Positions 1 to 58,800 of a stretch of 64,000 nt of DNA are shown in pieces. The translations under genes and the position numbers were made by a program. Below the pieces are notes generated by a model. That model was given only the letters and a program-made list of their open reading frames with translations. It had not been told where the DNA came from and made no database searches. Positions within the stretch are counted from its first letter, which is position 1; the number at the start of each line of letters is the position of its first letter. Location of the stretch: positions 124,001 through 188,000 of the IMG/VR virus record IMGVR_UViG_3300030098_004828. One strand, 5' to 3'.

Positions 1-145
1 TAATCTTTTTTCCATCAATATCTTCAAATCTAACTTCATCTATACATCCATCATCACCACCACCATTATATTCTACTTCTATATTTGCTATATTGTGATC
101 TTTAATCACTTGAACTGCTACATTTCTTTTTAGTTTTTTTTCCAT
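1..145 (-). CDS. Partial hypothetical protein (DUF6878-like), runs off window start
   Basis: Manual translation from ATG at 145: MEKKLKRNVAVQVIKDHNIANIEVEYNGGGDDGCIDEV...; the VEYxGGGDxG motif resembles DUF6878; not in the ORF track. Confidence 0.65.
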   Translation of the reverse strand, partial: MEKKLKRNVAVQVIKDHNIANIEVEYNGGGDDGCIDEVRFEDIDGKKI

Positions 146-509
146 TTTTTATTAATTTAATTTCTACACCTGGATTTTCCTTATCATATTCATAAGGTTC
201 AAATACAGGTATAATGTTTTCACAATTATCATCATCAATCCAATTATGTTTAACCATATCATCTTGCACTGTCTGTGCAGGATTAATATAGTCAAACTTA
301 TGTTTGGATCCTCTGATGAATTTAAATGATATTTTTACCGGTAATTCTAGTTTAGCCAATTGCTTCCTAAAGCCCTTTCTAAACTGATCATAGTATTTAG
401 CTGTTTCTTTTCTATACTTAGTTGTTGCTTTACTGGACACGAAATATCTTCCTGTCCATCTTCTTCCATTTTTACTACTTGGTACGTTACCTGGTATAAA
501 CCATTTCAT
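102..509 (-). CDS. RusA-like Holliday junction resolvase
   Basis: N-terminal IPGNVPSSKN, then DYIN...QDDM...IDDD acidic motif and C-terminal PGVEIKL, as in RusA-fold phage proteins. Confidence 0.7.
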   Translation of the reverse strand: MKWFIPGNVPSSKNGRRWTGRYFVSSKATTKYRKETAKYYDQFRKGFRKQLAKLELPVKISFKFIRGSKHKFDYINPAQTVQDDMVKHNWIDDDNCENIIPVFEPYEYDKENPGVEIKLIKNGKKTKKKCSSSSD

Positions 510-1486
510 AGAATACTTTTAAGTTTAACTTTAATTTCTTTATGAGCATCAGCAAAACCTTTCTCTTTTACAAGATCAGCAATGTCTTTGCTACTATCTA
601 ACCATGTGCCTTTTATGTCATATAACTGTTCATATTTATTAACAGCATTATGTCCAGCAACATCATTATCAAATAAAGTTACAACTTTTTTATACTTTTT
701 CTTAAGATTTTCAATAATATACGGTTTTATTACAGTATTTTCTGAGTCAGGTGCAATAACTTCTAAATTGTATCCAAATTGTTTTAGACACATTGCATCT
801 TTCAAAGAAGAACATATAACAAGATAAGGTTGATTATACTCTAATTGATCTATACCTTGAAGATGAGGTTTAACTTTTATGAATTTAAACTTCTTATTTT
901 TTGGTTGATAAATCTTATAGATGTTACCATCTTTATCAAAATAACCATATATATAAGTTTTAGCTAATAATGCACCAATAGTTCTTTGATCTATTGATTC
1001 TTCACTTTCTTTTACCATACGGTAAAAATTAAGTGGTTGAACATTATATTTATTAAGAATATCTTCACCAATATTAAAACTTAACCAAAATTCTCTGTCC
1101 CAATCAGACCATCTTCTTGGATTTACAGATTCTACTTTAAATTTTGCTTCTGGTTTTATAGTTGATTGTTTATATTCTCCTTTTTCTGTAATAAACTTGT
1201 TATAATCTTGACCTATTTTAAATACAGCTTTAGAAAAGTCTATTTTAAATAGTTCTTTAACTAAATCAATTTTATTACCACCTTTACCTGTTGAAAAATC
1301 TTTAAACTTATATTGACCTTTATCCGCAAATATCCACATGCTTGGAGTTCTTTCTGTAGGATGAAATACAGATTTAATCTGCACATTCTGTCCATTTAGT
1401 CTTTCTGGTAGATCCAGATAGAACTCAAACACCCATGTACTTGGAACTTTAGATCCATCTAATATGAGATTCTTTGTACTTATCAT
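506..1486 (-). CDS. DNA primase (TOPRIM)
   Basis: ERTPS and FKDFSTGKGG N-terminal motifs; SSLKDAM; LFDND; KDIAD. Confidence 0.85.
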   Translation of the reverse strand: MISTKNLILDGSKVPSTWVFEFYLDLPERLNGQNVQIKSVFHPTERTPSMWIFADKGQYKFKDFSTGKGGNKIDLVKELFKIDFSKAVFKIGQDYNKFITEKGEYKQSTIKPEAKFKVESVNPRRWSDWDREFWLSFNIGEDILNKYNVQPLNFYRMVKESEESIDQRTIGALLAKTYIYGYFDKDGNIYKIYQPKNKKFKFIKVKPHLQGIDQLEYNQPYLVICSSLKDAMCLKQFGYNLEVIAPDSENTVIKPYIIENLKKKYKKVVTLFDNDVAGHNAVNKYEQLYDIKGTWLDSSKDIADLVKEKGFADAHKEIKVKLKSIL

Positions 1487-12956: not shown

Positions 12957-13073
12957 ATGATATAATTTTAAATTATTGATATACTGCCGGAACCATTTGC
13001 AGATGTGTATAGCAACGCGCCACTCACTATACTAAATCCGGCTTTGTTTTAAACAGTTTACTCTGTTATGATA

Positions 13074-13475
13074 AATAGTACAATGAGTGATGAGCAAACT
13101 ACTCTCATAATGATGACTCTTGGGATTCCCCCTTAGATATTCATTAACCCTATGCAGGTGATTAACCTTTATACTTATACTCAATTAACAATGATTAGTT
13201 GCCAATATCATACATCATATAGCTCTGTTAAGAACTTCATAAGTTGTCAGGGCTTTGAGATATCCCTATAACATTAATGATTTTCAAAGTAAGTTGTTAA
13301 TAAAATTACTTTGTTCATCATACTTCTGCTTATACACTACATACGACAATACAATCATTTGATTATACTATCAGGCATCACACCAAACAGAATGCACTAA
13401 CCCCTTTGAAAAAAAGATTTATTGTGCGACACTCAGGATACTGTGGTAGCTAACCGTTGTATCCTTTGTACTATT
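13074..13475 (-). ncRNA. Putative ~400-nt structured ncRNA
   Basis: No ORF; 10-bp closing stem 13074-13083/13466-13475; nested stems; 12-bp hairpin 13345-13372 with three G-U pairs only on the minus strand. Confidence 0.6.
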
Positions 13476-13625
13476 AATTTTATGTATTGGAATTATATGA
13501 CCAGAGAGATAATATTACACACTTACTATGAAAATATATCAATGTAAGTATACTGACCATTATAATTCCAAATGAGGTTGCGGATACTATTATCCTATAG
13601 AACAAATAACAAATACTACATAGTA

Positions 13626-13790: not shown

Positions 13791-13999
13791 AGCTATATTA
13801 TTAATAATGTGAAGTGAAAATATTTAAGTGGTAAAAAGTGGTAATAATAGACTATTTGAGGTATCATTCAGAAACTTTAACACACAAACAAGAATAAAAC
13901 ACTATAAAATGTGAACACATATCAAATCAATGGAGTGTTGAGGGATTTTGAGTGGATTATTCTTATTTGAGTGGATATTTCATTGGATTAAACCCTGAA

Positions 14000-14452
14000 T
14001 TAACAAGGTTTAGTCCAATATAAGTTAGGAACAGGTATTTCATTACCATTTTCATCTAACTTGTTGTTTCCGTTTTCATCTCTTTCTACAACAGGATTGT
14101 CCAAATCTATCATAAAACCTTTTAGGAATTGGTCAGATTGAAACTTGTAGTTTATGTCTGATGGATTAATTGCAACTTTTTTACCTGATGCGTCTTCAGT
14201 GTAAAATGTATGTAATCCATAAACTACTTTACCATTACCACGGTTGAACAACTTAAGTTCTTTACCATCTGCTGTCTTATAAGTGATACCTCCGTCAAAC
14301 ATATCATCAGATGCGAAAGATACATTTCTAACTGTGATTGATTTTGACTTTGGATTATCAGGATAAGAGTGAAAGTATGAACCTGTTGTTGGTACTGTTA
14401 TGTCTTGAGTGTTTGTTTTAGTAGTGTTCTCTACTGTAGAATTGTTTTCCAT
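14000..14452 (-). CDS. Hypothetical (putative early) protein
   Basis: ORF track; preceded by the conserved hairpin element. Confidence 0.75.
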   Translation of the reverse strand: MENNSTVENTTKTNTQDITVPTTGSYFHSYPDNPKSKSITVRNVSFASDDMFDGGITYKTADGKELKLFNRGNGKVVYGLHTFYTEDASGKKVAINPSDINYKFQSDQFLKGFMIDLDNPVVERDENGNNKLDENGNEIPVPNLYWTKPC

Positions 14453-14551: not shown

Positions 14552-14645
14552 ATGTAGTACAAATACCACAGTGATAATAGTAATGATAGTGAGAAGTGGG
14601 TGGGTAATAATGTAGGGTGGGATAATTAAAAGGAAGAAAGCCCAA

Positions 14646-15116: not shown

Positions 15117-15145
15117 AGTTTAAAATTTTAAAGTTAATATCAGTG

Positions 15146-15187
15146 TTGTACAAGGTTGTTAAGAATAGAAATATGAGCGTAGCGAAT
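15146..15187 (-). promoter_or_regulatory. ACAAGGT + purine spacer + GNA-loop DNA hairpin (candidate early promoter)
   Basis: ACAAGGT 15150-15156; AT-GA-GC-GTA-GC-GA-AT (15173-15187). Confidence 0.65.
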
Positions 15188-15570
15188 TAATAATAATACG
15201 GAAAACACCCTCCACAAGTTCCTTTGTAACCTAAGTTACTTTATCAGATGTTTTTACTGGCTAAACCGTATTATCATAATTAGAAAGTTACACAAACAGT
15301 GACCCTTTACCCAGACCAATTAGGAATGGTAAACTCAAGATTTAATCATCACATTGAGGTGTGTTTGTTTAATCATTACTGTACACATAATGAAGATAAC
15401 TTTCCAAATAACTATAATGTCATATCAAATAACTTGACAAAGACAAAGAATAAAATAGTACAAATTAACATAATATAAAATTTTAATTACTTATGTCTAA
15501 TGTCCCACAGTGTACATGACCATACATACAATCAAGTTGATGGTGAGAGGTACACTATTTGAGTGGGTTA

Positions 15571-15723
15571 TTAGAATTCAATTGAGTAAGTTGAATGTAG
15601 TTTATCAATCTTGTCTTTGATTAATTGGATGTCTGATGTATTCTCAGGACAATAGTCCATTAACCAATTGAGTTCAAGTTCAAGATTGTTTAATTCAATT
15701 ACAATGTTTTTAATATTTGACAT
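15571..15723 (-). CDS. 50-aa hypothetical protein
   Basis: ATG at 15723 (MSNIKNIV...); first gene of the minus-strand arm. Confidence 0.6.
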   Translation of the reverse strand: MSNIKNIVIELNNLELELNWLMDYCPENTSDIQLIKDKIDKLHSTYSIEF

Positions 15724-15745
15724 AAGTATAAGTTTTAGTTCATGA

Positions 15746-15809
15746 GTGTACAAGGTTGTAGGATGAGAAGGAACCCGTCAGGGTTCTGACCCGTAGCGTA
15801 GCGGAGGGT
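15746..15809 (-). promoter_or_regulatory. ACAAGGT + purine spacer + GNA/GNNA-loop DNA hairpins (candidate early promoter)
   Basis: ACAAGGT 15750-15756; GAACCC-GTCA-GGGTTC (15771-15786); ACCC-GTA-GC-GTA-GC-GGA-GGGT (15789-15809). Confidence 0.65.
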
Positions 15810-15895
15810 GCTGGGTGAGGTGTTGGCTTGTTTCTTTTTGAGCGTGAGATTTTTTTTGAGTGATCTGTGAGACCAGAAGCGTGTGTTGTTTTAAA

Positions 15896-15930
15896 GGGGG
15901 GGCAGGGGCTGTTGGCCAACGGGCCGGGGG
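15896..15930 (+). other. G-tract cluster (potential G-quadruplex) at the strand switch
   Basis: G7-CA-G4-CTGTTGGCCAAC-G3-CC-G5. Confidence 0.55.
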
Positions 15931-16096
15931 AGTTTTATGTAGAACCTTCTCACAACTTAAAACATACAAAACTTTTATATAGGGTAAAATTTCACTATAT
16001 TATATATAAGAGGCCCTGGACCATTTTCCTATAAAAAGGTTTGTGAAAGGATCCCTCCCGAGTGTAAATTAATTATTAATGTAAAAATTAAATGTT

Positions 16097-16495
16097 ATGA
16101 ACAAATATTTATATTTTCAAACTGCTACAGGTATTGACGGTACAGATACTGATGAAGAAGCAATAATGGTACCAGCTGATAGTCTAATTGCTATTGAGGC
16201 TGGTGCTGCTGATGAAGACAAGCTTTGGATGCATTTTGCTGGTAAAGGGATTGGTGATGTAGATGCTGCTACTGATGTTATTTCAGTTAAGTTATCTGTA
16301 ACTGAAGAGAACTTCCAAGAATTCTGCAGACAAATTGCTAAATTTATCAATGCTGACGTATTGAATAGAGATAACTCTGCGTATTCAAAAGATGGATTCT
16401 TAGTTGTTGCTTGTTCTTTATCTGGATCTGTGTCTTACTTCCACAGTTCAGTTACTGCTTGTGACTTAATTCAAATTAAAACTGCTGCTGCATAG
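16097..16495 (+). CDS. Hypothetical protein, first gene of the plus-strand arm
   Basis: ORF track; preceded by TATATTATA motif, followed by a terminator. Confidence 0.8.
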   Translation: MNKYLYFQTATGIDGTDTDEEAIMVPADSLIAIEAGAADEDKLWMHFAGKGIGDVDAATDVISVKLSVTEENFQEFCRQIAKFINADVLNRDNSAYSKDGFLVVACSLSGSVSYFHSSVTACDLIQIKTAAA

Positions 16496-16523: not shown

Positions 16524-16547
16524 GTGGTGCTGCTTCGGTGGCACCAC
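16524..16547 (+). terminator. Hairpin with cUUCGg tetraloop
   Basis: GTGGTGCTGC-TTCG-GTGGCACCAC. Confidence 0.7.
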
Positions 16548-34923: not shown

Positions 34924-35478
34924 ATGGCTAAAAAACATATCTTAAGTTTAGAAATACCAACTGTTGCAAATTGTGAAATATTTACTATTTGGGATACTAG
35001 TGAGTATACTTCAGAAATACCTATAGATTGTCCTACATTAAGTATAGTTCCTCCAGGATTTCAAAATCCTATTTCTATTGAACAGAATGAAAATTTCCAT
35101 AGAGATTTTTCTACTTGTGCTTTTGGTTTGCAAACAATGGATTGTTCAAATACAAGAAATACTTTTCCTGATGGAATATATATCATAAGATGGAGTGTTG
35201 CTCCACATGATAAAGTATATGTAGAATATAATCATATGAGAATTACAACAATACTTTCTGCATATTATGCAAAACTTTGTGAGTTAGAAGTTAAACCTTG
35301 TGAGCCAAGTTCTGATATGTTAGATGTAATGTCAGAAATGAAGTATATAAGAACATTAATTGATGCAGCAAAATCAAAAGTTGAATATTGTCATGAACCA
35401 AATGCAGGCATGCAATTATATGATTATGCAAAGAAAAGATTAGAAAAGATAACTTGTGAAGTTGTCTGTTGTAAATAA
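34924..35478 (+). CDS. Cys-containing virion protein (tail hub-like)
   Basis: FPDGIYIIRWSV Ig-like segment plus helical C-terminus. Confidence 0.55.
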   Translation: MAKKHILSLEIPTVANCEIFTIWDTSEYTSEIPIDCPTLSIVPPGFQNPISIEQNENFHRDFSTCAFGLQTMDCSNTRNTFPDGIYIIRWSVAPHDKVYVEYNHMRITTILSAYYAKLCELEVKPCEPSSDMLDVMSEMKYIRTLIDAAKSKVEYCHEPNAGMQLYDYAKKRLEKITCEVVCCK

Positions 35479-46875: not shown

Positions 46876-49800
46876 ATGGCACGAAAGAAACAACAACAGA
46901 GACCGGATGTCCCTAGACCTGAATTACAAAATACATCTAATGTAGATACAGATGTATTTGTAAAAGGTATGACTAAGGATATGGATGTTGCCTTGACCAA
47001 TAAAGAAAATTGGACTCATGCTGTTAATGCTATTAATAATTCTCATCAAGGTGATGCAGGAACTATAGGAAATGAACCTGCTAATTTAGGATGTGCAGCA
47101 ATACCCTATACCATTATAGGTATGATTCATCTATATGGTGATAAATGGGCTATATTTTCAACAGATGATGTTAATAGTCAAATAGGAATATTTGATGATA
47201 GTCATTGTAAATATGATATTGTTGTTAATGATCCTTGTTTAAATTTTAACAAACGTTATTTAATTACAGGAGCTTCTAAGGAAAGTTTTGAGTGTCAGTG
47301 GTGGGTATACTGGGATGATGGTATAAATCCTTCTAGAGCTCTTAATACAGCGGATGTACCATATATTCAAACTAGTTATACAGAAGATGATGGATGTGTT
47401 ATATATGAAGATCAAATACCTTTAAGACTTGATTGTGAAAAAATAAGATTAAATCCTATCCTTGATGTTCCATGTATTAAGTTGTCAAAAGCAAAAGATG
47501 GTGGTCAATTACAAAATGGATCTTATGAAGCTTATATTGCATATGTAGTAGATGATAATAAAGTAACGGATTATTATAAATCTAATATACAAACTCTTTG
47601 GGATCATCAAGATAATGCAGGATCACTAGATATAGATATTGAAAACTTAGATAAACAATTTGAAAGTTATCAATTAGTTATCTATACAAATGCAGGTATG
47701 AATTCATATGCTGTAGTAGTAGGAACATATAGTACAGAACAATCTCATATTAATATTGATATGATAGATATGTCTGCTTCTACACCAGGTCTTGTAGATC
47801 AATTACCATTATATACTCCTATTTTTGAAAAGTCTGAAAAGATGTATGCGGTTAATGACTATCTTCTAAGACAAGGTCCCACTACAAATTTTGATTTTAA
47901 TTATCAATGTCAAGCTAATAATATAACAGCTAAATGGGTTTCTGTAGAGTATCCGGCAGATTATTATGTAAAAGGTGGTAACAAACCAACTTTTATGAGA
48001 GATGAACAATATTCTTTCTTTATAAGATTTGTTTATAATACAGGTAATAAATCTTCTTCTTATCATATACCAGGACGTGCTGCTGTTGGTATACCTGCAA
48101 ATGATATGGGTGTTCCTCCTGATATGAATCAAACATTATCTGGTGAAGCCGGGTTTCCAAATTGGAAAATAAATAATACTGCATTTCAAACAATGTCTAT
48201 AGATGCAGGTGGTGGTGAAAATATAGGAACATATACAGATGATGGAGGATTAATTGTTGCAAAAGGATGGATGGGATATTGGGAATCAACAGAAAGATAT
48301 CCTAATGATCCAGTTAGATGGTGTGATCTATGTAACACTCCTATAAGACATCATAAATTTCCTGAAGAAGGAACAAGTATTTGGACACAAAGAAACAATC
48401 CAAATAATCAATTTATATATGTATTAGGTGTAGACTTTGATAATATAGAATGGCCAAGATATATAGATAAGGATGGTTTTGATGTACCAATACCAAATAT
48501 AGTTGGTTATGAAATACTAGTGGGATCTAGACAAGGTAATAAATCTATTATAGCAAAAGGTCTTGCTAGAAACATGAGAAGGTATGATATTCAAAATGCT
48601 CAAGGTGAACGTGGTATTGCTGATGCTGAAGGTGGTGATGATAACTTAGAAGGATTAATGCCTAACTATCCATTTAATGATTTAGATAGAGATCCATATT
48701 TATCACAACAAGAAGTTATAAGACAAAGTGATTATGTACCTTATGGTCCTAATTATACAATGCATAATATATTTACATTCCATTCTCCAGATACTTCGTT
48801 TGATAGACCTTTCTTAAGTCCATCTGAAATTAAAAGTTATGGTGTAACAGGAGGATATTCTTTAGGTAGATTTAAAAGATCAGAGGATCATCCTAAACAT
48901 AAATTAATAAGAGATATTGCAGCTATTATTGCAGCTATTATTGGTGCAGGTTATGCTATTATGGAAATGCGTGGTGAAAAGGTTCAAAAAGTAAAAGGAT
49001 CTAAAGCATTATCTATTGGTCAAGATCCAGGACCATATAATCAATCAGATGCACTTAAAGATGAATCAACTATTGATACTACTGCTGGTACAGGTACAGG
49101 TGGTGTAAGTATTGCAGGTGTTTATGCTTCAGGGGGTACAGGTACAGGTGGTACTGCTAATGTTGATATGGATGTTAGTAATGATTCAGGACTTGAAGGT
49201 ACAAACCCTGCTGCTACCGATGATGATGGAATTACTAATCAAGACCTACAAAATATAAGCCCTACTCTTCCTCCTGATCCTAGTGGTGTTGATACTGATA
49301 CAGGTATAGAAACAGTAAATGGTGGTGGTGCAGCTCCAGGTATGGCTGGTAATATAAGTATAACTGATCCAGGTCCTGTTGGTTTTATACCTCCAAGTAT
49401 TGTTACTCAAACATTAACAGCAGATGGTGCTACTGCTGATTATCAGTTAACTTATGGTCCTAGTACATCTCAAGCACAATTAAATGCATATGAAAATATG
49501 CAAGCTTTTAATACCGCACAAGAAAATGATGCACCAGGAACTCCAGCAGGTCAAGAAGGTCAACAAGGATCAGGTGGTACAAGTTCAGGTAATCTTAACA
49601 TTATATCAGGTATTAATATTAATGATATTGCTAATGGATTTCAACCAACACAAGAAAGTGAATTTTCAATGTCTACTACACCTATAGGTGATGCAACTAA
49701 TCTTATTCTTACTGGTGGTCTTCCTAATAGTGTTTCAGGTGCAGAAGAAGATTTCTTACATGATATAAAAAGTAAGGGTGATAATGCTGCAATGCAAACA

Positions 49801-52800
49801 ACTGGTTATACAGGATCTAGTAGAGATGTTGAAATGAAAGGGAGTAAGTATAAATCATTACCAGGATTTTTACAAATAATGTTTAAGACATATTCATTCT
49901 TAAACTTCATGGTTGAAGGTGGTGAAGGAATTATAGAGATGATTTATGAATTTATGAATCCTCAAGACTATGCATATAAATATAATTCTTATGGTATGTA
50001 TAGTGGTAATTTTATTCCACAAATGGGTGATAGACATAGAATAGAATGTAAAAGAGCTAGATACTTATCAAGTGCATTTCAAAATCTTGGACCAGAATAT
50101 AAAATAAATAATTTACATAGACCTAAAACAGTTGTTTTACAAGGAGTTGAAAATCTTGTATCTCCTTCTTCTCCACAATACTGGAGAGATAATTCAAAAT
50201 ATGTATTAGGAGAACTTCCTTCATGGGTATTGCAAAATCCTACACAACCTGTAACAACTAAAATATCCGCTCACTATGTAGGATTAAAATATAGAATAGA
50301 TAATCAATATGGTCAAATACAAAGTATAAGACAACTACCTGTAAAATGTGCAGGGATTTTTAGAAACGCAGCTTTTCCTAGTTCTGCTGATGTTAATAAT
50401 GCAGAACCAAATGAAACTATATGTACTACTTGTGATGAAGAGACAGGACTTATATTTGATGAAAATACTAGATTTAGATCAGAAGTCATATTTGGTGGTG
50501 ATTGTTTCATTAATAGATATAGTGAAAAAGTTATAATGCCATTCTTTTGGGATTTCTTAAAAGGAGAACCAGATGGATATACTTTTGATTATAGATTGCA
50601 TCAAAATGTTCCTTTTGTTAGATTCTGGTATAATTCACAAAAATATGAATTATCTGGATTTGTTAGACCTATTACAGATTTAAGTTTTTCTTGGTTATCT
50701 GATCCTAGTGATCCAGGATTACCTTCAGCTCTTCATAACTTAGATAGAATAGGTAGTGGTAACTATAATGCTATAGATGAAGGATGGTTATCTGGTACTC
50801 CTAATAATGAAGATGATTGGTGGATGACTGCAAACTCAGAAAGTCAATCAGGTATGTTTGGTGATGGATTTGGTGGTCTAGGTGGTGGAACAGGTTGGGG
50901 TTCAGGTACTGATGCTAATACTACTGGTACAACTTATACAGATGGTGGTCCACCTGATACATCAGGAGATAGTGTATCACAATCAACTTCTAACTGGGCA
51001 AGTTCAGGAGGACAAGCAACAAAATCTAATGGAATCTTTACATTAAAGAATGCTTATTGCTATTTACATTCTAGTGGTATAAATGAATTCTTTGTAGAGT
51101 CAGAATTAAACATGGCTCAAAGAGATTGGGATGATAAACCTGCAGGTAGACATTATGATTGGCAAGAGTTTACAGATGTTAATGCATTATTTCATGCAGA
51201 TATTATTAAAGATGGAAACTTTTATAAGTTTGATAGATCTTTAATGTGGAGAAATTTAGGAAGTCAATTATTATCATACGGTTTTGTACAACCATTAAGT
51301 TATGATCCAGTAGTTGCTGAAGAGTGTATGACACATTATCCAAAAAGAATAATGTATTCATTAAGAGCTCAGGATGAAGCTAAAAAAGATTTTTGGAGAG
51401 TTTTCCTTCCATTTAATAAAGAAGACTTTAAAGAGCCTGTAACTACTATTAAACCTATAAATAAAACAGGTGCTGTAATATTATTTCCACATAGATCTCC
51501 TCAAATATGGCAAGGTGTAGATACATTACAAACAGAAGGTAACACTAAAGTTACAATAGGAGATGGAGGTTTATTTGCTGGACCAAGACAAAATATTACA
51601 AATTCAGATCTTCCAAATGAATATGGTTCTTGTGAAAATATGCTTAGTGCAATTAATACACCAGCTGGTTTATTTTATATATCACAACAACAAGGTAAAA
51701 TATTTAACTATACGGGCGGTTTAGAAAATATTGCTGATAGAGGAATGAAACAATGGTTTAATAATTTTCTTCCTTCTAGACTATTAATGGAGTTTCCTGA
51801 AATGGAAGGTTCTATAGATGCAGACAATCCAATTATGGGTATTGGAACTCAATCAGTTTATGATGCTAAACTTGATTTAGTTTACTTTATGAAAAAAGAT
51901 TATGCATTATGTGATCATTCAGGATGTATACAATGGACAGAAGATGATGGATTTGTTTATAATAATACATTATGTAATGATGCAGATCAAATAGCTTCAT
52001 GTCCTGATGGTTATACATTGTATGAAGCTGGAGATGTGCATCCTGGAACAGGAGAAGTTTTAACAGAAGATACTTGTTGTAATATAGTTAGAGATGATTA
52101 TCAAGAGTTTGAAGAAGCTACTATGGATTGTAATACAACAGTTTATGTAGTCCCTGAAATTTTTAATTTTGAAAGACTCCCTAATGATGAAGTTTTAACT
52201 AAGCATGAAAAAAATACAGTTCTTTTTAATGTATCTGATGATGTATTTGAAAACATCAGAGAAAAGAAACCTATGAAAGTTAAACTAAATATTCCTTTCA
52301 TAGATGGTAGAAGAATAAATTTAACTTTAAAGAACTTTGAACCTCATAGAAAAAATACTAGAGTTTTAACAAAAAGTAAAGATGGAACTGTAGAAAGAAA
52401 TTATGTACCTAATATACGTGCATATAGAATAAGAAATAAAGAAATACTTAAAAATGGTAAAGAAGTAAAAGCTACTGGATCCATTATTTTCTCTAGAAAA
52501 GCATTTACAGGTTTCATAACAATAGGTAATCAACAATATGAAATTAGAAGGCGTGGTCAAAATAAATACGCATTAATACATTCTTATGATGTTAAGGAAA
52601 GTCCTTTATTTGCTTGTGATACTAACACATCACACAGCATTCCTGATTCAGTTAAATTAGAAGATTTACCAAGAACAGCAAGACAACTTGCTAAAAGTGG
52701 TAATAGTTCACCTGATCATTGTATTAATTTAGCTGTTACAGTTGATTATTATACATATGATTTTCTTGGTCAAAATTATCAAGACACAAGTGATTGGGCA

Positions 52801-55800
52801 ATGATGTTAGTTGCAGCAGTGAATGAAATATATATGAATGATCTTAATATTTCAATTACAAGTGATTTTATTTATATTTATACAGATGAAAGTGTAGATC
52901 CATTTGCAGATTGTTGTGGAAGCAACCAAAATGATATGCTTCCGGTACTTAGAGATCAATGGGATGGTGATGAACCAGATTTTGATGGTGTTATTAGAAG
53001 TATAGCTACTTTATTTACTGCTAGGGGTTGTGGTGGAGTAGCATATACAGGTGGATTATGTTATAGAAATAATTGGGGTTACAGTGTTAATGGTTTTTGT
53101 GGAAATAACATGCCTTCAGGCACACTTCCAATACAAGGACAAACTACAGAAGGTTATGATATAGAAGATGGTTTTGTGAATCTTACTAATTCATTAACTG
53201 TAAAAATAACAGCTCATGAAATAGGTCATAATGTTGGTACATTACATACACATGATTGTGTATGGGAGCCAGATCCAGTTTATGGTTTTGGTGGATTTAC
53301 AGGTGATACAGGTCAAATTGATATTGGTGGTAACCTAGTTTATTCTATGTTTATAGATAATTGTGAAGACGATTGTGATGAAACAGCAACTGCTGATTGT
53401 GGATCAGAACCTATTGATTCAAGTTGTTGGCCATCTCCTTGGCCTATGCCTTATCAAGAAAATTTAACTAATACAGCATTTGAGTATACTACTTTAATGG
53501 GTTATAATGAAAATTTAGCTTTTCAGGGTTGTATAACTTATGATCAACTTAATGGGATTTTAGGATTTCATCCAATAGTTATGGAACAAGCTATAAACCC
53601 ATGGGTAGATGATGTACAAGCTAATAGTGGTACTTCATGGAATCTTTTTGGAAATCAAGAAGGTGAAACAAATTGTTTATCTTGTGCTGATGTAAATGGT
53701 GAAAATGGTGGAGGTGATGATGATCCTATTTATGAATGTGATGACTTACAAGAATTTTTAGATGCTACAATTAATTCTGAATTAGGATGGCTTGTTGAAC
53801 AAGGTGGATCAGGAGGTTATACACCAACTCAATATTGTAATTATTGTGATAATCCAGTTGCAGATAATATTAATGCAATAGAAGGTTCATTAGATCTATG
53901 TAATTGTTGTACAGGAGGAGAACTTATAGTGGAAGGTTGTACAAATCCAAATGCAACAAACTATAATCCTAATGCTAATGTAGATGATGGATCTTGTGAA
54001 ATTGTAGGTTGTACAGATCAGTTTGCAACTAACTATAATCCAAATGCAAATATGACATGTATGGGTGAAACCGGTTTTATAGAAAATGGTTGTTGTCTTT
54101 ATGATTATAGTTGTAATAATTATTATTTATGGGTTGATGCTACAATTAATTCACAATTAGGTTATGATTGGACTCCAAGTGATTATTGTACTTTTTGCTT
54201 AAATCAAGAATTTTATGCAGATGATCCTATAATGACTCTTGAAAATGCAACAGAATTCTGTAGTTGTTGTAATGGAGAAGATGTAGAGATTTTTGGATGT
54301 ATGGATTCAGAAGCAAATAACTTTAATCCATTTGCAACTACTCCATGTAATGGAACACAAGGAGAATATGGACCTACAATTTCAATTATAAACGGTACAT
54401 TTAGTGGAGGAATTACTATACCAGAAGGAATAGAAAATGTAAATGGAGATTCTGTTCCTGCTGGATATTATTCTCCTACATTTTATTTACCACCAGATGG
54501 ATGGCATGCATGTAAAAATGCTAATTTTAATCCTATTATGGGACAATTAGGTGAAGACTGGCCTAATATTACTACATATGCAAATTCTGGAGGAGGCACT
54601 GGTGGTGGTGGTGTAAACGTTGAAACTGGAGAATGTTGGAATTTTGTTTTACCAGCTTCAGATTTCTTTGGTGATGATAGCTTACCTGATTCTGGACCAC
54701 ATGGTAATATTACACCAGATAATTATACTGATTGGTTCTTTGATAATCTAGGGGATCCTGGAATATGTGGTGGATATTCCAGTATAATAGCAAATGATAT
54801 AATTAATTCAGGTATAAGTACTCACGCATATGGAGATGGTTTTATGGGTATGGCTTGGTCTCCAAGTTTTCGGGAAGATATGCCTTATTATGTTTTTGAA
54901 ACTGGTCAGGAATATGATGCAACTTGGGCGTATGAATGGCATAGAGAAGGAGTGGGACAAGAATTAAGTAGTCCAATGATAGCAAATGTTGAATATACAA
55001 TGAGTGTTGTTGTAGCTAATTCATCTGGTGGTTATATATTAGATGGTTATGAGTGGGAAGCTGCTGGTGTAAGAATATGGGGTGGTAATTGTGCTTGTCC
55101 TAATGATGATAATGGAGGTGAATTATTATGGGAGTCAGAACCTCAATCTGGAAGTTCCGATGTACCTATGGAATGGGTTACACGTACTGGAACATTTACA
55201 CCAACTCAAAATTTTACACATATAACTATAGAACCAGGTAATGGTGGTGAAACATGGAATGGACCATCTACACCTGGTAATGAATGGAATGGACAAACAA
55301 CTAATGGAGAGTCAGGTATATATGGTGCCGGTAATGACGTTTATATATTTTTAGATTATGTTAGTGATATAACTCCAACAGCTATATTAGGTGAAGATAA
55401 TGATTGTTGTGAATATGGATCTGAGGAAGAAGAAGAAGGAGGAGGAGAAGAAACATTAAGTTGTGAACAAATTCAAGAAGATCCTCAAGGTTATATTGAT
55501 ACATTAATTAATGATCCTATAGGTTTAAATTGGCCTCCAATTGAATTTTGTATGTTCTGTAATGGAAGTATACAAAATGAAGAGGTTGCTAGTATTGGTG
55601 AAGTTTGGAGTGCATGTAGTTGTCTTTGTACTGAAGAACCTAGACCTTTACCTGATTGTGATGACATGTGGACTTTTATTAATGATAATATTAATTCACT
55701 GGGAGTTAATTATAATTGGACAGTAGATAATTATTGTACATTTTGTTTAAATCCTTCATTATTTGGAGTTGTTCAAGATGTTGAAGGTGTTTTAGATTAT

Positions 55801-58800
55801 TGTGATTGTCCACAATGTGAGAATACTCCTTATGATCCAAGTAATGAAACAATAGATTGTGAATGTTTTTGTCCTGATGGTTATGATTTAGTATTTAATG
55901 ATCCACCAACTTATACATTAGCAGATCCAGAAATAGATTGCGTTGCTGATGTTATACCTCTTCTTGAAATGCCTACAGTTGAAATATGTGATACTACATT
56001 AGCTGAAAATGCAACATTTGTAACTAACCCAGGTTTAAATGTAGACGGTGGTACATTTGGTGAGATTGGACAAAATAAAACACCATCTCCTTGGATAGTA
56101 TGTATGAGAGGAAGTAATCAAGAGGCACCAGGTTATTATCCTGATGGCTTTTGTTATGACGGAATGGTAGAAGATGGTGTACAATATGATATGACATTTA
56201 CAACCGACACATGGACAGGACAAGGTAATGCTCTATCTGTAGATAATTTGGATTATGTAATGGATCCTTTTAATCAATATGCTATAGATCCTTATGAAGG
56301 AGATGCTTATGTTGGAATGCTTCATAGTTTTAGTTGTGATGGTCTATGTAGTGAAGGTTGTGATGTTGGTCTATGGCAAGAAGGAATGGCACAAGCATTA
56401 GAAGATGCAGATGGAAATCCTACATTTTTATTTGCAAACCAACAATATGTTGGTAAATTCTATGCAACACAATTAGTAGGTTGGAATACACGTCATAGAG
56501 GATACATAGATGAGGAAGAATTTTTAGAAGACGGTATAACTCCAAATCCAACTTTTGGTAATTTTATCTTAAATAATCCTTGGACTTATCCATTAGAAGA
56601 AAATTATCAAGAGCAAGGTGATTTTGCAGGATCTGTAGGATCTGCAGCTGGTGGGGATGCTGTTGATGCAGAAGGAAACCCTGTATCACACAGGATAACT
56701 CCTCAAATAGAAATATGGGGTGGTACTGATCAATGCGGAGTTCAAGGTGAAAACGGTTTATATTTAGGTGGAGAATTTAATTATGAAGGTAATTATAATT
56801 CTGAATTATTATGGAGTTCAGGTCCTATAATGTCTGCAGATAATTGGACAGAATATAATTATGAGTTTACTCCTACAAATGATTGGGCATGGATACATAT
56901 AAGAGTTCAATTACTAATAGATGGAGTTCCAGCAAAAACAGATGAAGATACCACTAATGGAGTTCCAGCAAGAGATAAAGCTACGTATGTAGTTATAGAT
57001 GGTTTTGTAGCTCCAACAGAAGATGTTAAATGCTGCACATGTCCTGAAGGTTATCAAAGAGTATTAAATGATGGAATATATCAAACACCTATATCAGAAC
57101 AAGAGTGTATAAAAGAACATGATGCGGATGGTGCTTACTTAACTTATTCAGATGAGTTTGATGTAATATGTGTAAAGTGGGAGCCTACAATGAATGACTT
57201 AGTATGTTTACAGCAATGGTCAGATATTACAGGTGATTGTGTAGATCCTCAATATGAAGATGATGTAGATCTTATTGAATTAACAGACGAACAATACTTT
57301 AAAGATGTTTCATGGACAGTAAGCTATGATCCAAAAATAAAAGGTTGGATTTCATTCCATGATTGGCATCCGGAACTTAGCATGCCAAGTTTAAATCACT
57401 TCTTAACAACTAATACTTTTGAAGTTGATGATATTTATTGTCCTCCTGGATGGGAATTAAATGATGGAATTTGTTGTCAAAATATTGTTGGTAGTTTTGA
57501 AGGTACTGAAATTATTGAAGAAGAAGATGTTACTATAGATCAAAATCCTGATGAACCTAGAGAAGAATTTTGTCCTATAGATATATATATAGCATTAGAT
57601 TTTTCAGGTTCAAATTTTTCCGTGCCAGGATTTCAAGGTAGTGGGGGTTCTGTTTTTAATGATTACTTTATTAGGGAATTTGTAGATACATTAGATATGC
57701 AAATGGATGGTTCAATTAGTGGAAATATGACAAATGCAACTAATCAAATACAAGTTGGTGTGGGTGCATGGACATCAATGTTACCAATGAATCTAGAACC
57801 TTTGTGTCCTTGGGGTGATTCTGATAGTGCTGGTATTATAAATCAAAATGTAACAGGTTTAACTAATAATGCATTAGAAATATATAATACAGCAAATAGT
57901 ATGATAAATAGTCAGCAGGCTATGTATGGTATAGCGGCTACTACTGGACCTGGAGATACTTATCAAGCGGCTATGTCAGTAGCTTATAATGAATTTAATA
58001 ATACTGTAGGTTCTTCACCTTTAGGTGATAGATCTGGTCAAAATGGTTATCAAAAACATTTAATTATTGTTACAGATGTAACATCTATTTCTCCTTGTAA
58101 TAATAATTGTACTTGTTGTGGTACTGGTAATCCTTATCCTGATCAATCTATGGATTATTATTTACAACTAGCACAAGCTGAAGGATTTACAGTTCATGTA
58201 GTTTGGTCAGGAGCTCCAGGGGGTCAAAGTCTCCAACAAATAATAGATAGAACTGAATGTTTACTTACTTATTCAAACGGACAACTTTATCAAATTGGTG
58301 TAAATAATATAAATGATACAGATGCTGTTGCTGCTAATACACAAGCTGTTGCACAAAATATTGCACGAGATTTAGATTGCACTCTTCCTCCTGATCCTAT
58401 AGAATGCTTATGCCCTGATGATACTTGGACAATGGTTTATTCAGCTGATGGTGGTGATACTTTTACATTAGAAGAAAATCCTGATCCAACTGCAGATTGT
58501 GAACCAGGTAGAACAGCTGTATGTAGAAAAATAAATTGTTATTGTGATGATTCACAAGTAGAATCTGATTTAACTGATATAGATATTACTACAACGGGTG
58601 AATGTAGTGATATTTATGAAGTGGGAGAAGAAGACTATGTTAATCCAAATCCTCTTTTCTGTAGTTATGATTCTGAATATTGTACAACAGGAAGTAATAT
58701 TAGAGGAGGATTATGGAGACATAATTATAGATGTAATTTATTTTCTAATTATTATGATGTTCAATATGGTTGGGAAATTGAAATGGTTGAATCAGTTGGT

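What the first reader, a model, noticed from the sequence alone, without database searches (positions are those of the whole stretch)
15810..15975. G-quadruplex-capable GC island at the transcription divergence point
Seen: in a very AT-rich genome, four G-tracts (G7, G4, G3, G5 at 15896-15930) with a perfect palindrome GTTGGCCAAC in the middle loop. They follow a strongly G/T-skewed stretch and sit exactly between the minus and plus arms, next to the first hairpin element. Inference: the physical genome end, packaging site or replication origin. If it is the terminus, the early hairpin genes would be injected first.
Basis: partly seen in the sequence, partly recalled or inferred. Interest (0 to 1): 0.6.

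Follow-up and report, generated by a model that had tools for sequence, protein, structure and literature searches.

The report
Conserved G-box genome-end signal, crAss-like phage
The G-rich island is this marine crAss-like phage's copy of a short, single-copy DNA signal: two G-runs 28 bases apart, which in cultured relatives sit at the very end of the packaged genome, so it most likely marks where the DNA is cut for packaging rather than acting as a G-quadruplex.

Summary
G7, G4, G3 and G5 lie at 15896-15930, with GTTGGCCAAC at 15911-15920. They sit in the 373-bp gap between the minus arm (replication genes) and the plus arm (TerL, portal, capsid) of a distant crAss-like phage.

Only two of the four G-tracts are conserved. 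G7 is "box 1" (GGGGGT) and G5 is "box 2" (GGGGAG). Their G's are the invariant columns in 20 aligned relatives. The boxes start 26-30 bp apart (mode 28) in 42 sequences and are followed by TAGRACC. G4, G3 and the palindrome are private to this genome. A four-tract quadruplex is therefore not the conserved feature.

The element is single-copy per genome. It sits in the same gap in Bacteroides phages DAC15, DAC17, crAss001, 'tikkala', crAss002, cr10_1 and Flavobacterium phage FpV4. In DAC15/DAC17 the annotated exact direct terminal repeat ends 13 nt after box 2, directly before TAGAACC or TAGTAACC. In 'tikkala' a 739-bp tandem duplication ends inside box 2.

Best reading: a terminase cut or recognition site at the right genome end, predicted near 15939/15940. 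Small minus-strand early genes would then enter the cell first. This could not be tested directly, because only contigs were available and no raw reads. The right half of the gap holds the first copy of the plus-arm promoter motif.

The parts
15571..15723 (-). First (promoter-proximal) small ORF of the minus arm, 50 aa, with no family match. It corresponds in position to the small minus-strand genes inside the DAC15 terminal repeat.
15724..15895 (.). Spacer specific to genome B, GC- and G/T-rich. It holds a hairpin (15770-15786) and a leftward promoter-like pair, GTAGCGTAGCG (15793-15803) and TGTACAAGGTTGT (15747-15759). That pair recurs once more upstream of the next minus ORF, near 15145-15157.
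   Evidence: No homologue was found in 85 related loci or elsewhere in the record.
15896..15902 (+). Box 1, the first conserved G-run (G7 here; GGGG(G)T in relatives).
   Evidence: Invariant columns in alignment A3; spacing table.
15903..15925 (+). Variable filler between the boxes. In relatives this is a short hairpin of shifting register plus an A/T-rich linker. In B it holds the private G4 and G3 tracts and the palindrome GTTGGCCAAC (15911-15920).
15926..15932 (+). Box 2, the second conserved G-run (GGGGGAG). Its start is 30 nt from the start of box 1, and the run ends are 28 nt apart.
15933..15946 (+). Spacer TTTTATG followed by TAGAACC. The right genome terminus is predicted between 15939 and 15940, by alignment to the DAC15 repeat boundary (TTAAT | TAGAACC).
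   Evidence: This is an inference by homology and was not measured.
15947..15972 (+). Block 3, a conserved A/C-rich stretch (ACTTAAAACAYACAAAA-like).
15986..16010 (+). First copy of the plus-arm promoter motif (TATATTAT at 15996-16003, then TATAAG). About 8 further copies lie in plus-arm intergenic gaps.
16028..16039 (+). Short conserved inverted repeat (CCTWTA..AAAGG) downstream of the promoter. It probably forms a stem at the 5' end of the transcript.
16097..16495 (+). First plus-arm gene, 132 aa, with no family match. It is only 25% identical between genomes A and B and is absent at this position in several relatives.
16524..16547 (+). GC-rich stem-loop after the first plus gene, read here as a terminator.
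   Evidence: the terminator scan of this region did not list it

Best explanation
The island is this phage's copy of a conserved, single-copy cis-element of crAss-like phages. Read 5' to 3' on the plus strand, the element is box 1 (GGGGGT), a short hairpin, a linker, box 2 (GGGGRG) about 28 bp after box 1, roughly 10 nt of spacer, TAGRACC, and an A/C-rich block. I infer that it is the site where the terminase recognises and cuts replicated DNA, creating the right end of a linear genome with direct terminal repeats. The packaged DNA would then end about 7-13 nt after box 2, at roughly 15939/15940. The two G-boxes would lie within the last ~45 bp of the molecule. The small minus-strand ORFs to the left (15723 downward) would be the first genes to enter the cell. 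What is shown: the anatomy, the conservation, the single-copy status, and the coincidence with the termini of cultured relatives. The extra G4 and G3 tracts and the palindrome are lineage-specific filler. The right part of the gap is an ordinary promoter for the plus arm.
For: (1) The phage is crAss-like. TerL, portal and major capsid protein match PHROG families. TerL is 23-26% identical to Crassvirales TerL. Primase, DnaB and helicase lie on the minus arm. (2) A profile of the gap finds the element in 23 related IMG/VR loci, and a pattern scan adds 17 more. The only invariant columns in the box region are the G's of the two boxes. Box starts are 26-30 bp apart, mode 28, in 42 sequences. (3) There is one copy per genome: 14028-14128 in genome A and 139891-139984 in genome B. 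(4) The same architecture occurs once in the strand-divergence gap, next to the first minus gene, in seven cultured or assembled relatives: crAss001 (133-167), DAC15 (1796-1849), DAC17, 'tikkala', crAss002 (92498-92528), cr10_1 (35275-35308) and FpV4 (358-389). (5) DAC15 and DAC17 are linear records with an 'Exact direct terminal repeat' of 1-1842 and 1-1839, derived with PhageTerm according to 10.1101/2020.03.04.977157. The repeat, and the record itself, end 13 nt after box 2 and directly before TAGAACC or TAGTAACC. By my own estimate, a random boundary would fall inside this 54-bp element with a chance of about 5e-4. (6) 'tikkala' carries a 739-bp tandem duplication whose unit ends inside box 2. 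(7) Genomes A and B each assemble as a closed circle, which fits terminal redundancy.
Against: There is no direct end mapping. All 20 runs are held as contigs, and the tool lists no places where molecules begin or end. Depth left and right of the site differs by only about 1.2-fold in X4. The profile built on marine relatives reaches crAss001 only at E = 0.003 and misses DAC15, so homology rests on shared architecture and position. crAss002, which also has the boxes, is reported to use headful packaging from a pac site (PMC8042965), so the element need not always mark a fixed end. Carjivirus communis and phi14:2 lack the strict pattern. The contig ends near the element look like assembly breaks at the G-rich or variable stretch, and none falls at the predicted cut (G006, L018, L080, L124, L148; X9 stops at 15838 and restarts at 15934). 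No left repeat boundary could be identified.
Confidence: 0.6

Rival explanations
1. The element is a transcription control site. It could be the promoter or loading site for the first leftward (early) transcript, perhaps read by a virion-delivered RNA polymerase. Or it could be an upstream operator for the divergent promoters. Under this reading its place at the genome end in DAC15 follows from early genes starting there.
For: It lies 40-220 nt upstream of the first minus-strand ORF in every genome examined. It also lies 60-100 nt upstream of the plus-arm promoter box. A short hairpin follows box 1 in most relatives. This recalls the hairpin early promoters at the N4 genome end, which I cite from my own knowledge.
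Against: It is single-copy, whereas the plus-arm promoter motif recurs about 9 times. Genome B has its own repeated leftward motif between the boxes and the ORF. Early promoters of phi14:2 share no motif (10.1101/2020.03.07.982082). No metatranscriptome contig covers the gap. Strand folding is no better than shuffled sequence, z from -0.9 to +0.5, and RNAalifold finds no consensus structure. This reading does not explain why the DAC15 repeat ends inside the element.
Confidence: 0.2
2. The element is the replication origin. The two G-boxes would act as initiator binding sites, flanked by A/T-rich DNA that unwinds easily, at the point from which the two arms diverge.
For: Cumulative GC skew has its minimum at the gap in both genomes of the record. 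The element is unique and conserved, with two direct repeats and A/T-rich flanks. Replication genes begin on the adjacent arm. For Carjivirus communis, origins were predicted near the strand switch (PMC10983915).
Against: The skew switch coincides exactly with the switch in coding strand, so it is not independent evidence. Only two repeats are present, and no initiator gene was identified next to the gap. This reading does not predict that the DAC15 terminal repeat ends inside the element.
Confidence: 0.12
3. The four G-tracts form an intramolecular G-quadruplex, and that structure is the functional feature.
For: Genome B has four tracts with loops of 2, 12 and 2 nt. Such motifs are rare in this genome. 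G-runs are enriched in the gaps of many relatives, although at varying positions, for example L053.
Against: Only two tracts are conserved, and they are 26-30 nt apart. Genome A, DAC15 and most relatives have no four-tract arrangement. There is no motif with loops of 7 nt or less. A folding model that allows quadruplexes did not place one in B's minimum-energy structure, though this was run with RNA parameters and is rough.
Confidence: 0.06

Closest known systems
Right boundary of the exact direct terminal repeat of Bacteroides phages DAC15 and DAC17 (MT074136, MT074138; Steigviridae)
   Same: Both have box 1 (GGGGGT or GGGGGA) with a small hairpin, an A-rich linker, and box 2 27-28 bp after box 1. 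In both, box 2 is followed by a short spacer, TAG(A/T)AACC and an A/C-rich block. Both lie in the gap between the first small minus-strand gene and the plus arm, and both are single-copy apart from the repeat itself.
   Different: TerL is only about 24% identical. The spacer from box 2 to TAGAACC is 13 nt in DAC15 and 9 nt here. Termini were measured for DAC15 and not for this phage. B carries GC-rich filler and a 170-bp private spacer.
Gap element of crAss001, Kehishuvirus 'tikkala' and cr10_1
   Same: They have two G5 boxes 28 bp apart, with box 1 in a GGGG..CCCC hairpin, at the same genomic position. crAss001 is reported to have a 576-bp terminal repeat (PMC6235969). The 739-bp tandem repeat of 'tikkala' ends in box 2.
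   Different: Box 2 is followed by GGTGGGGTTGG and TATATACT, not by TAGRACC. The position of the crAss001 repeat is not published in the text I could read.
Terminal-repeat cutting sites of T7-type phages
   Same: Both are unique sites in concatemeric DNA that fix the genome ends, with the repeat regenerated during packaging and early genes next to the end that enters first. This comparison rests on my own knowledge.
   Different: There is no sequence similarity. The reader protein here is unknown, and no small terminase gene was identified in the window.
Herpesvirus pac1 packaging signal
   Same: As I recall it, pac1 is an A/T-rich core flanked by short G/C runs, with cleavage at a fixed distance to one side, read by a terminase related to phage TerL. 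This is a recalled resemblance and was not tested here.
   Different: The virus group, spacing and sequences all differ, and no homology is claimed.
Canonical G-quadruplex motifs
   Same: Genome B has four G-tracts of 3 or more on one strand.
   Different: One loop is 12 nt, the arrangement is not conserved, and no structural test was possible.

Membership tests
Phage genome terminus or terminase cleavage site (direct-terminal-repeat type) | Read starts pile up at the site and a block of two-fold coverage adjoins it. | not testable with these tools
   All runs are held as contigs only; the table of places where molecules begin or end lists none.
Phage genome terminus or terminase cleavage site (direct-terminal-repeat type) | The sequence corresponds to experimentally mapped termini of relatives. 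| tested here: met
   The DAC15 and DAC17 repeats end inside the element. The 'tikkala' tandem unit ends in box 2. Correspondence is by architecture and position; profile support is marginal.
Phage genome terminus or terminase cleavage site (direct-terminal-repeat type) | The site is unique in the genome and conserved among relatives. | tested here: met
   One hit per genome. Found in 23 + 17 related loci. Box G's are invariant.
Intramolecular G-quadruplex motif | Four G-tracts of 3 or more with loops of 1-7 nt. | tested here: not met
   The loops are 2, 12 and 2 nt. The record has no motif with loops of 7 nt or less.
Intramolecular G-quadruplex motif | The four-tract arrangement is conserved in relatives. 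| tested here: not met
   Only two tracts are conserved, 26-30 nt apart.
Intramolecular G-quadruplex motif | The quadruplex forms in K+ (spectroscopy). | not testable with these tools
   This needs an experiment. A rough folding model did not favour a quadruplex.
Replication origin | A strand-composition switch that is independent of gene orientation. | tested here: inconclusive
   The skew minimum lies at the gap, but every gene also changes strand there.
Replication origin | An array of initiator repeats with an adjacent initiator gene. | tested here: inconclusive
   Only two G-boxes are present. Neighbouring ORFs have no family match.
Structured non-coding RNA | A match to a described RNA family, or a conserved secondary structure with covariation. 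| tested here: not met
   Rfam gave nothing at gathering score and only chance-level hits at E up to 10. RNAalifold predicted 0 pairs. Folding z-scores were near 0.
crAss-like phage (Crassvirales-related) | TerL, portal and major capsid protein of the crAss type, and two oppositely oriented arms. | tested here: met
   Matches to phrog_6681, phrog_6547 and phrog_11589. TerL hits in 154 records, nearly all from crAss-like phages and phages of Bacteroidetes hosts. Arm structure shown.
crAss-like phage (Crassvirales-related) | A virion RNA polymerase with the DFDxD motif. | tested here: inconclusive
   The 4217-aa ORF matches only phrog_37948, has no PDB hit and has no DFDxD motif. The rest of the genome was not searched.

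The most novel reading that the evidence does not exclude
The paired G-boxes are the shared packaging and terminus signal of a large part of the crAss-like phages, from gut Steigviridae, Intestiviridae and Suoliviridae to marine and Flavobacterium phages. They would be kept at a fixed 28-bp spacing while TerL has drifted to about 24% identity. Sitting in the last ~45 bp of the DNA that enters the cell first, they might also serve as the docking point for ejected virion proteins that start early transcription, possibly through a G-rich structure at the end.
Probability: 0.15. Interest if true: 0.8.

Novelty: new variant of a known kind. Interest (0 to 1): 0.55.

Why it matters
How crAss-like phages package their DNA is stated to be unresolved (PMC10136315). 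Terminal repeats are reported for only a few isolates. A short sequence signature that marks the genome end would have three uses. Ends and entry polarity could be predicted for thousands of uncultured genomes. Circular or chimeric assemblies such as this record could be re-set. And terminase studies in DAC15 or crAss001 would gain a concrete target. I found no paper describing the element. For this window alone the result is modest: the G-quadruplex idea is not supported as the conserved principle.

Tried and rejected
- **Rfam:** scans at gathering score and at E up to 10 gave nothing relevant.
- **tRNA scan:** none found.
- **Nucleotide search of phage records:** no near relative.
- **Consensus RNA structure:** RNAalifold on 20 relatives predicted no pairs. 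The hairpin after box 1 exists in most sequences but in shifting registers, so I did not build a covariance model.
- **Single-strand folding:** the gap and the core are no more stable than shuffled sequence.
- **Quadruplex-aware folding:** no quadruplex appeared in B's minimum-energy structure. The outputs for crAss001 and cr10_1 looked unreliable and were not used.
- **Read-based end mapping:** impossible, because only Logan contigs are held.
- **Contig ends near the element** (G006, L018, L080, L075, L124, L148): I rejected these as evidence of termini. They do not coincide with the predicted cut, and X9 shows the G-rich stretch itself breaking assemblies.
- **Left repeat boundary:** ATAATGTGG lies 13-29 nt before the left boundary in DAC15/17 and 'tikkala'. 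Variants in this window (13803, 14608) are at chance level, and the motif is not conserved in the marine family.
- **Site variant versus TerL:** by eye, the TAGGACC and TAGAACC/AAGGTT site variants do not track TerL identity.
- **Position of the crAss001 repeat:** not found in the paper or its supplements.

Full report
**1. Setting**

The window is bases 124001-188000 of a 245,646-bp IMG/VR virus record. A self-comparison shows that the record is not one genome. It is two collinear relatives of about 122 kb, 70-90% identical, joined head to tail. Genome A runs from 1 to about 124,690 and genome B from about 124,783 to the end. The join lies at a stretch that looks identical for roughly 110 nt in the printed sequence. 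Five related near-complete IMG/VR genomes measure 110-123 kb, and one of them has end repeats. The finding lies in genome B. Genome A offers a built-in comparison at 14,011-14,305.

The phage is a distant crAss-like phage:
- TerL, portal and major capsid protein match phrog_6681, phrog_6547 and phrog_11589.
- TerL is 23-26% identical to Crassvirales TerL.
- Primase, DnaB-like helicase and a second helicase lie on the minus arm.
- Sequencing runs that hold the region are marine metagenomes.

**2. The observation**

It is correct in every detail. G7, G4, G3 and G5 lie at 15896-15930. The palindrome lies at 15911-15920. A stretch of 42% T and 33% G precedes them. The site sits in the 373-bp gap between the first minus-strand ORF (ATG at 15723) and the first plus-strand ORF (ATG at 16097).

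The motif is rare. The whole record has two relaxed quadruplex motifs against 0.35 expected, and none with loops of 7 nt or less. The palindrome by itself is unremarkable. Identical contigs from other samples span the site, so the sequence is real.

**3. What is conserved**

A TerL search gave 80 related loci. A profile of the gap found the element in 23 of them, and a pattern scan added 17 more. The alignments show this fixed order on the plus strand:
- box 1, GGGG(G)T;
- a short hairpin whose register shifts between genomes;
- a mostly A/T-rich linker;
- box 2, GGGGAG;
- 8-10 nt of spacer;
- TAGGACC, or the variants TAGAACC and AAGGTT;
- an A/C-rich block;
- then the box TATATTAT.

The only invariant columns in the box region are the G's of the two boxes. 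Box starts are 26-30 bp apart, mode 28, in 42 sequences.

In genome B, G7 is box 1 and G5 is box 2. G4, G3 and the palindrome fill the hairpin and linker positions and occur in no other genome. Genome A has a GGGGC/GCCCC hairpin there. The 170 bp to the left of box 1, which make up most of the 'GC island', are also private to B.

The element occurs once per genome. No RNA family matches it. No consensus secondary structure is predicted. Folding stability is no better than for shuffled sequence.

**4. The rest of the gap**

The box with TATATTAT at 15996-16003 is the first of about nine copies of one motif, roughly TTTTTG TATATTAT aTATAg. All copies lie on the plus strand in plus-arm intergenic gaps, including those before capsid-region genes. 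It is therefore the plus-arm promoter.

GC-rich hairpins followed by T-runs close several plus-arm genes.

On the other side, B's private spacer holds a leftward motif pair that recurs once upstream of the next minus ORF.

**5. The link to genome ends**

A loose pattern for the two boxes hit Bacteroides phage crAss001 once, at 133-167. That is 46 nt upstream of the start of minus-strand gp1. The same architecture is present, once per genome and in the strand-divergence gap, in these phages:
- DAC15 and DAC17;
- 'tikkala';
- crAss002;
- cr10_1;
- Flavobacterium phage FpV4.

DAC15 and DAC17 are deposited as linear genomes with an 'Exact direct terminal repeat' of 1-1842 and 1-1839. The paper states that PhageTerm gave clear repeats (10.1101/2020.03.04.977157). 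The repeat holds four or five small minus-strand genes. It ends 13 nt after box 2, directly before TAGAACC in DAC15 and TAGTAACC in DAC17. The DAC15 record itself ends there, so both boxes lie in its last 50 bp.

In 'tikkala' a 739-bp unit is present twice in tandem and ends inside box 2. This is what a terminal repeat kept twice in a circularised assembly would look like. The paper reports no repeat for this phage (PMC10028833).

By my own estimate, a random boundary would fall inside a roughly 50-bp element in a 100-kb genome with a chance of about 5e-4. This has happened in two lineages.

**6. Interpretation**

The most economical reading is that the element is the site at which the packaging enzyme fixes the right genome end. 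By alignment, the end in genome B would be at about 15939/15940.

The small minus-strand ORFs left of the gap would then be terminal, and probably early. That matches DAC15, where transcription of the minus arm starts at the right end.

The quadruplex idea is not supported as the conserved principle.

**7. Limits**

- No raw reads were available.
- Contig depths show no two-fold step.
- Contig ends near the element look like assembly breaks. In run X9 the relative's contigs stop at 15838 and resume at 15934.
- The marine profile reaches crAss001 only marginally and misses DAC15.
- crAss002 has the boxes but is reported as headful (PMC8042965). The element may therefore be a pac-type start site in some lineages.
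- Carjivirus communis and phi14:2 lack the strict pattern.
- A role in early transcription or replication cannot be excluded, and these roles are not mutually exclusive. The skew switch is confounded with gene orientation.

**8. Operators' notes**

Read laying was given 5,901 letters in a single call. No other genetic code was used. No broken toxin gene or animal virus was involved.

Noticed in passing
window 1-783; whole record G000: The 245.6-kb record, rated 100% complete, is two related ~122-kb genomes joined head to tail at a shared, apparently identical stretch of roughly 110 nt. Window bases 1 to about 690 still belong to genome A. This is most likely a chimeric assembly of two co-occurring strains.
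   Followed up: yes
L213 106-1583 (OQ198717 record 90765-92242): Kehishuvirus 'tikkala' carries a 739-bp tandem duplication (99.7% identical) that ends inside box 2. It is probably an unrecognised terminal repeat; the paper lists DTR as False.
   Followed up: partly
window 14598-14621: This is the only other relaxed G-tract cluster of the record (GGGTGGG, TAATAATGTA, GGGTGGG). It lies in a minus-arm intergenic gap 1.3 kb left of the boxes. It resembles the sequence just before DAC15's left repeat boundary and may be the left repeat boundary here. Statistically it is weak.
   Followed up: partly
window 15145-15157 and 15747-15759 (minus strand): Two copies of a leftward motif pair (CGCTACGCT ... 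ACAACCTTGTACA) lie 25-35 nt upstream of two small minus ORFs. They are candidate early promoters. An X4 contig spanning 15109-15776 ends at both copies and has a depth of 36, against 19-22 in the flanks.
   Followed up: partly
window 27640, 33302, 34888, 38941, 61931 (and 96617, 103357 in window-offset genome coordinates): A recurrent plus-arm promoter motif, TTTTTG TATATTAT aTATAg, lies in intergenic gaps before structural-region genes.
   Followed up: partly
window 12957-13625 and 15117-15570: Two long stretches in the minus arm, 669 and 454 bp, are treated here as non-coding: only ORFs of 41-63 aa overlap them. They recall the abundant early non-coding RNAs reported for phi14:2.
   Followed up: no
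window 13947-13981 and 15558-15573: Three copies of TTTGAGTGG(A/G)(T/A)TATT lie in minus-arm non-coding DNA. Their function is unknown.
   Followed up: no
window 46876-59529: A 4217-aa ORF matches only phrog_37948 (virion structural protein). It has no solved-structure relative by sequence and no DFDxD motif.
   Followed up: partly
window 16097-16495: The first plus-arm gene has its own promoter and a GC-rich stem-loop just downstream. It is only 25% identical between genomes A and B and is missing at this place in several relatives, which makes it a moron-like variable insert.
   Followed up: partly
L053 220-300: One relative has a dense G-run cluster (G5, G6, G3, G6 with short loops) between block 3 and the promoter box. 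G-runs recur in these gaps at varying positions.
   Followed up: no
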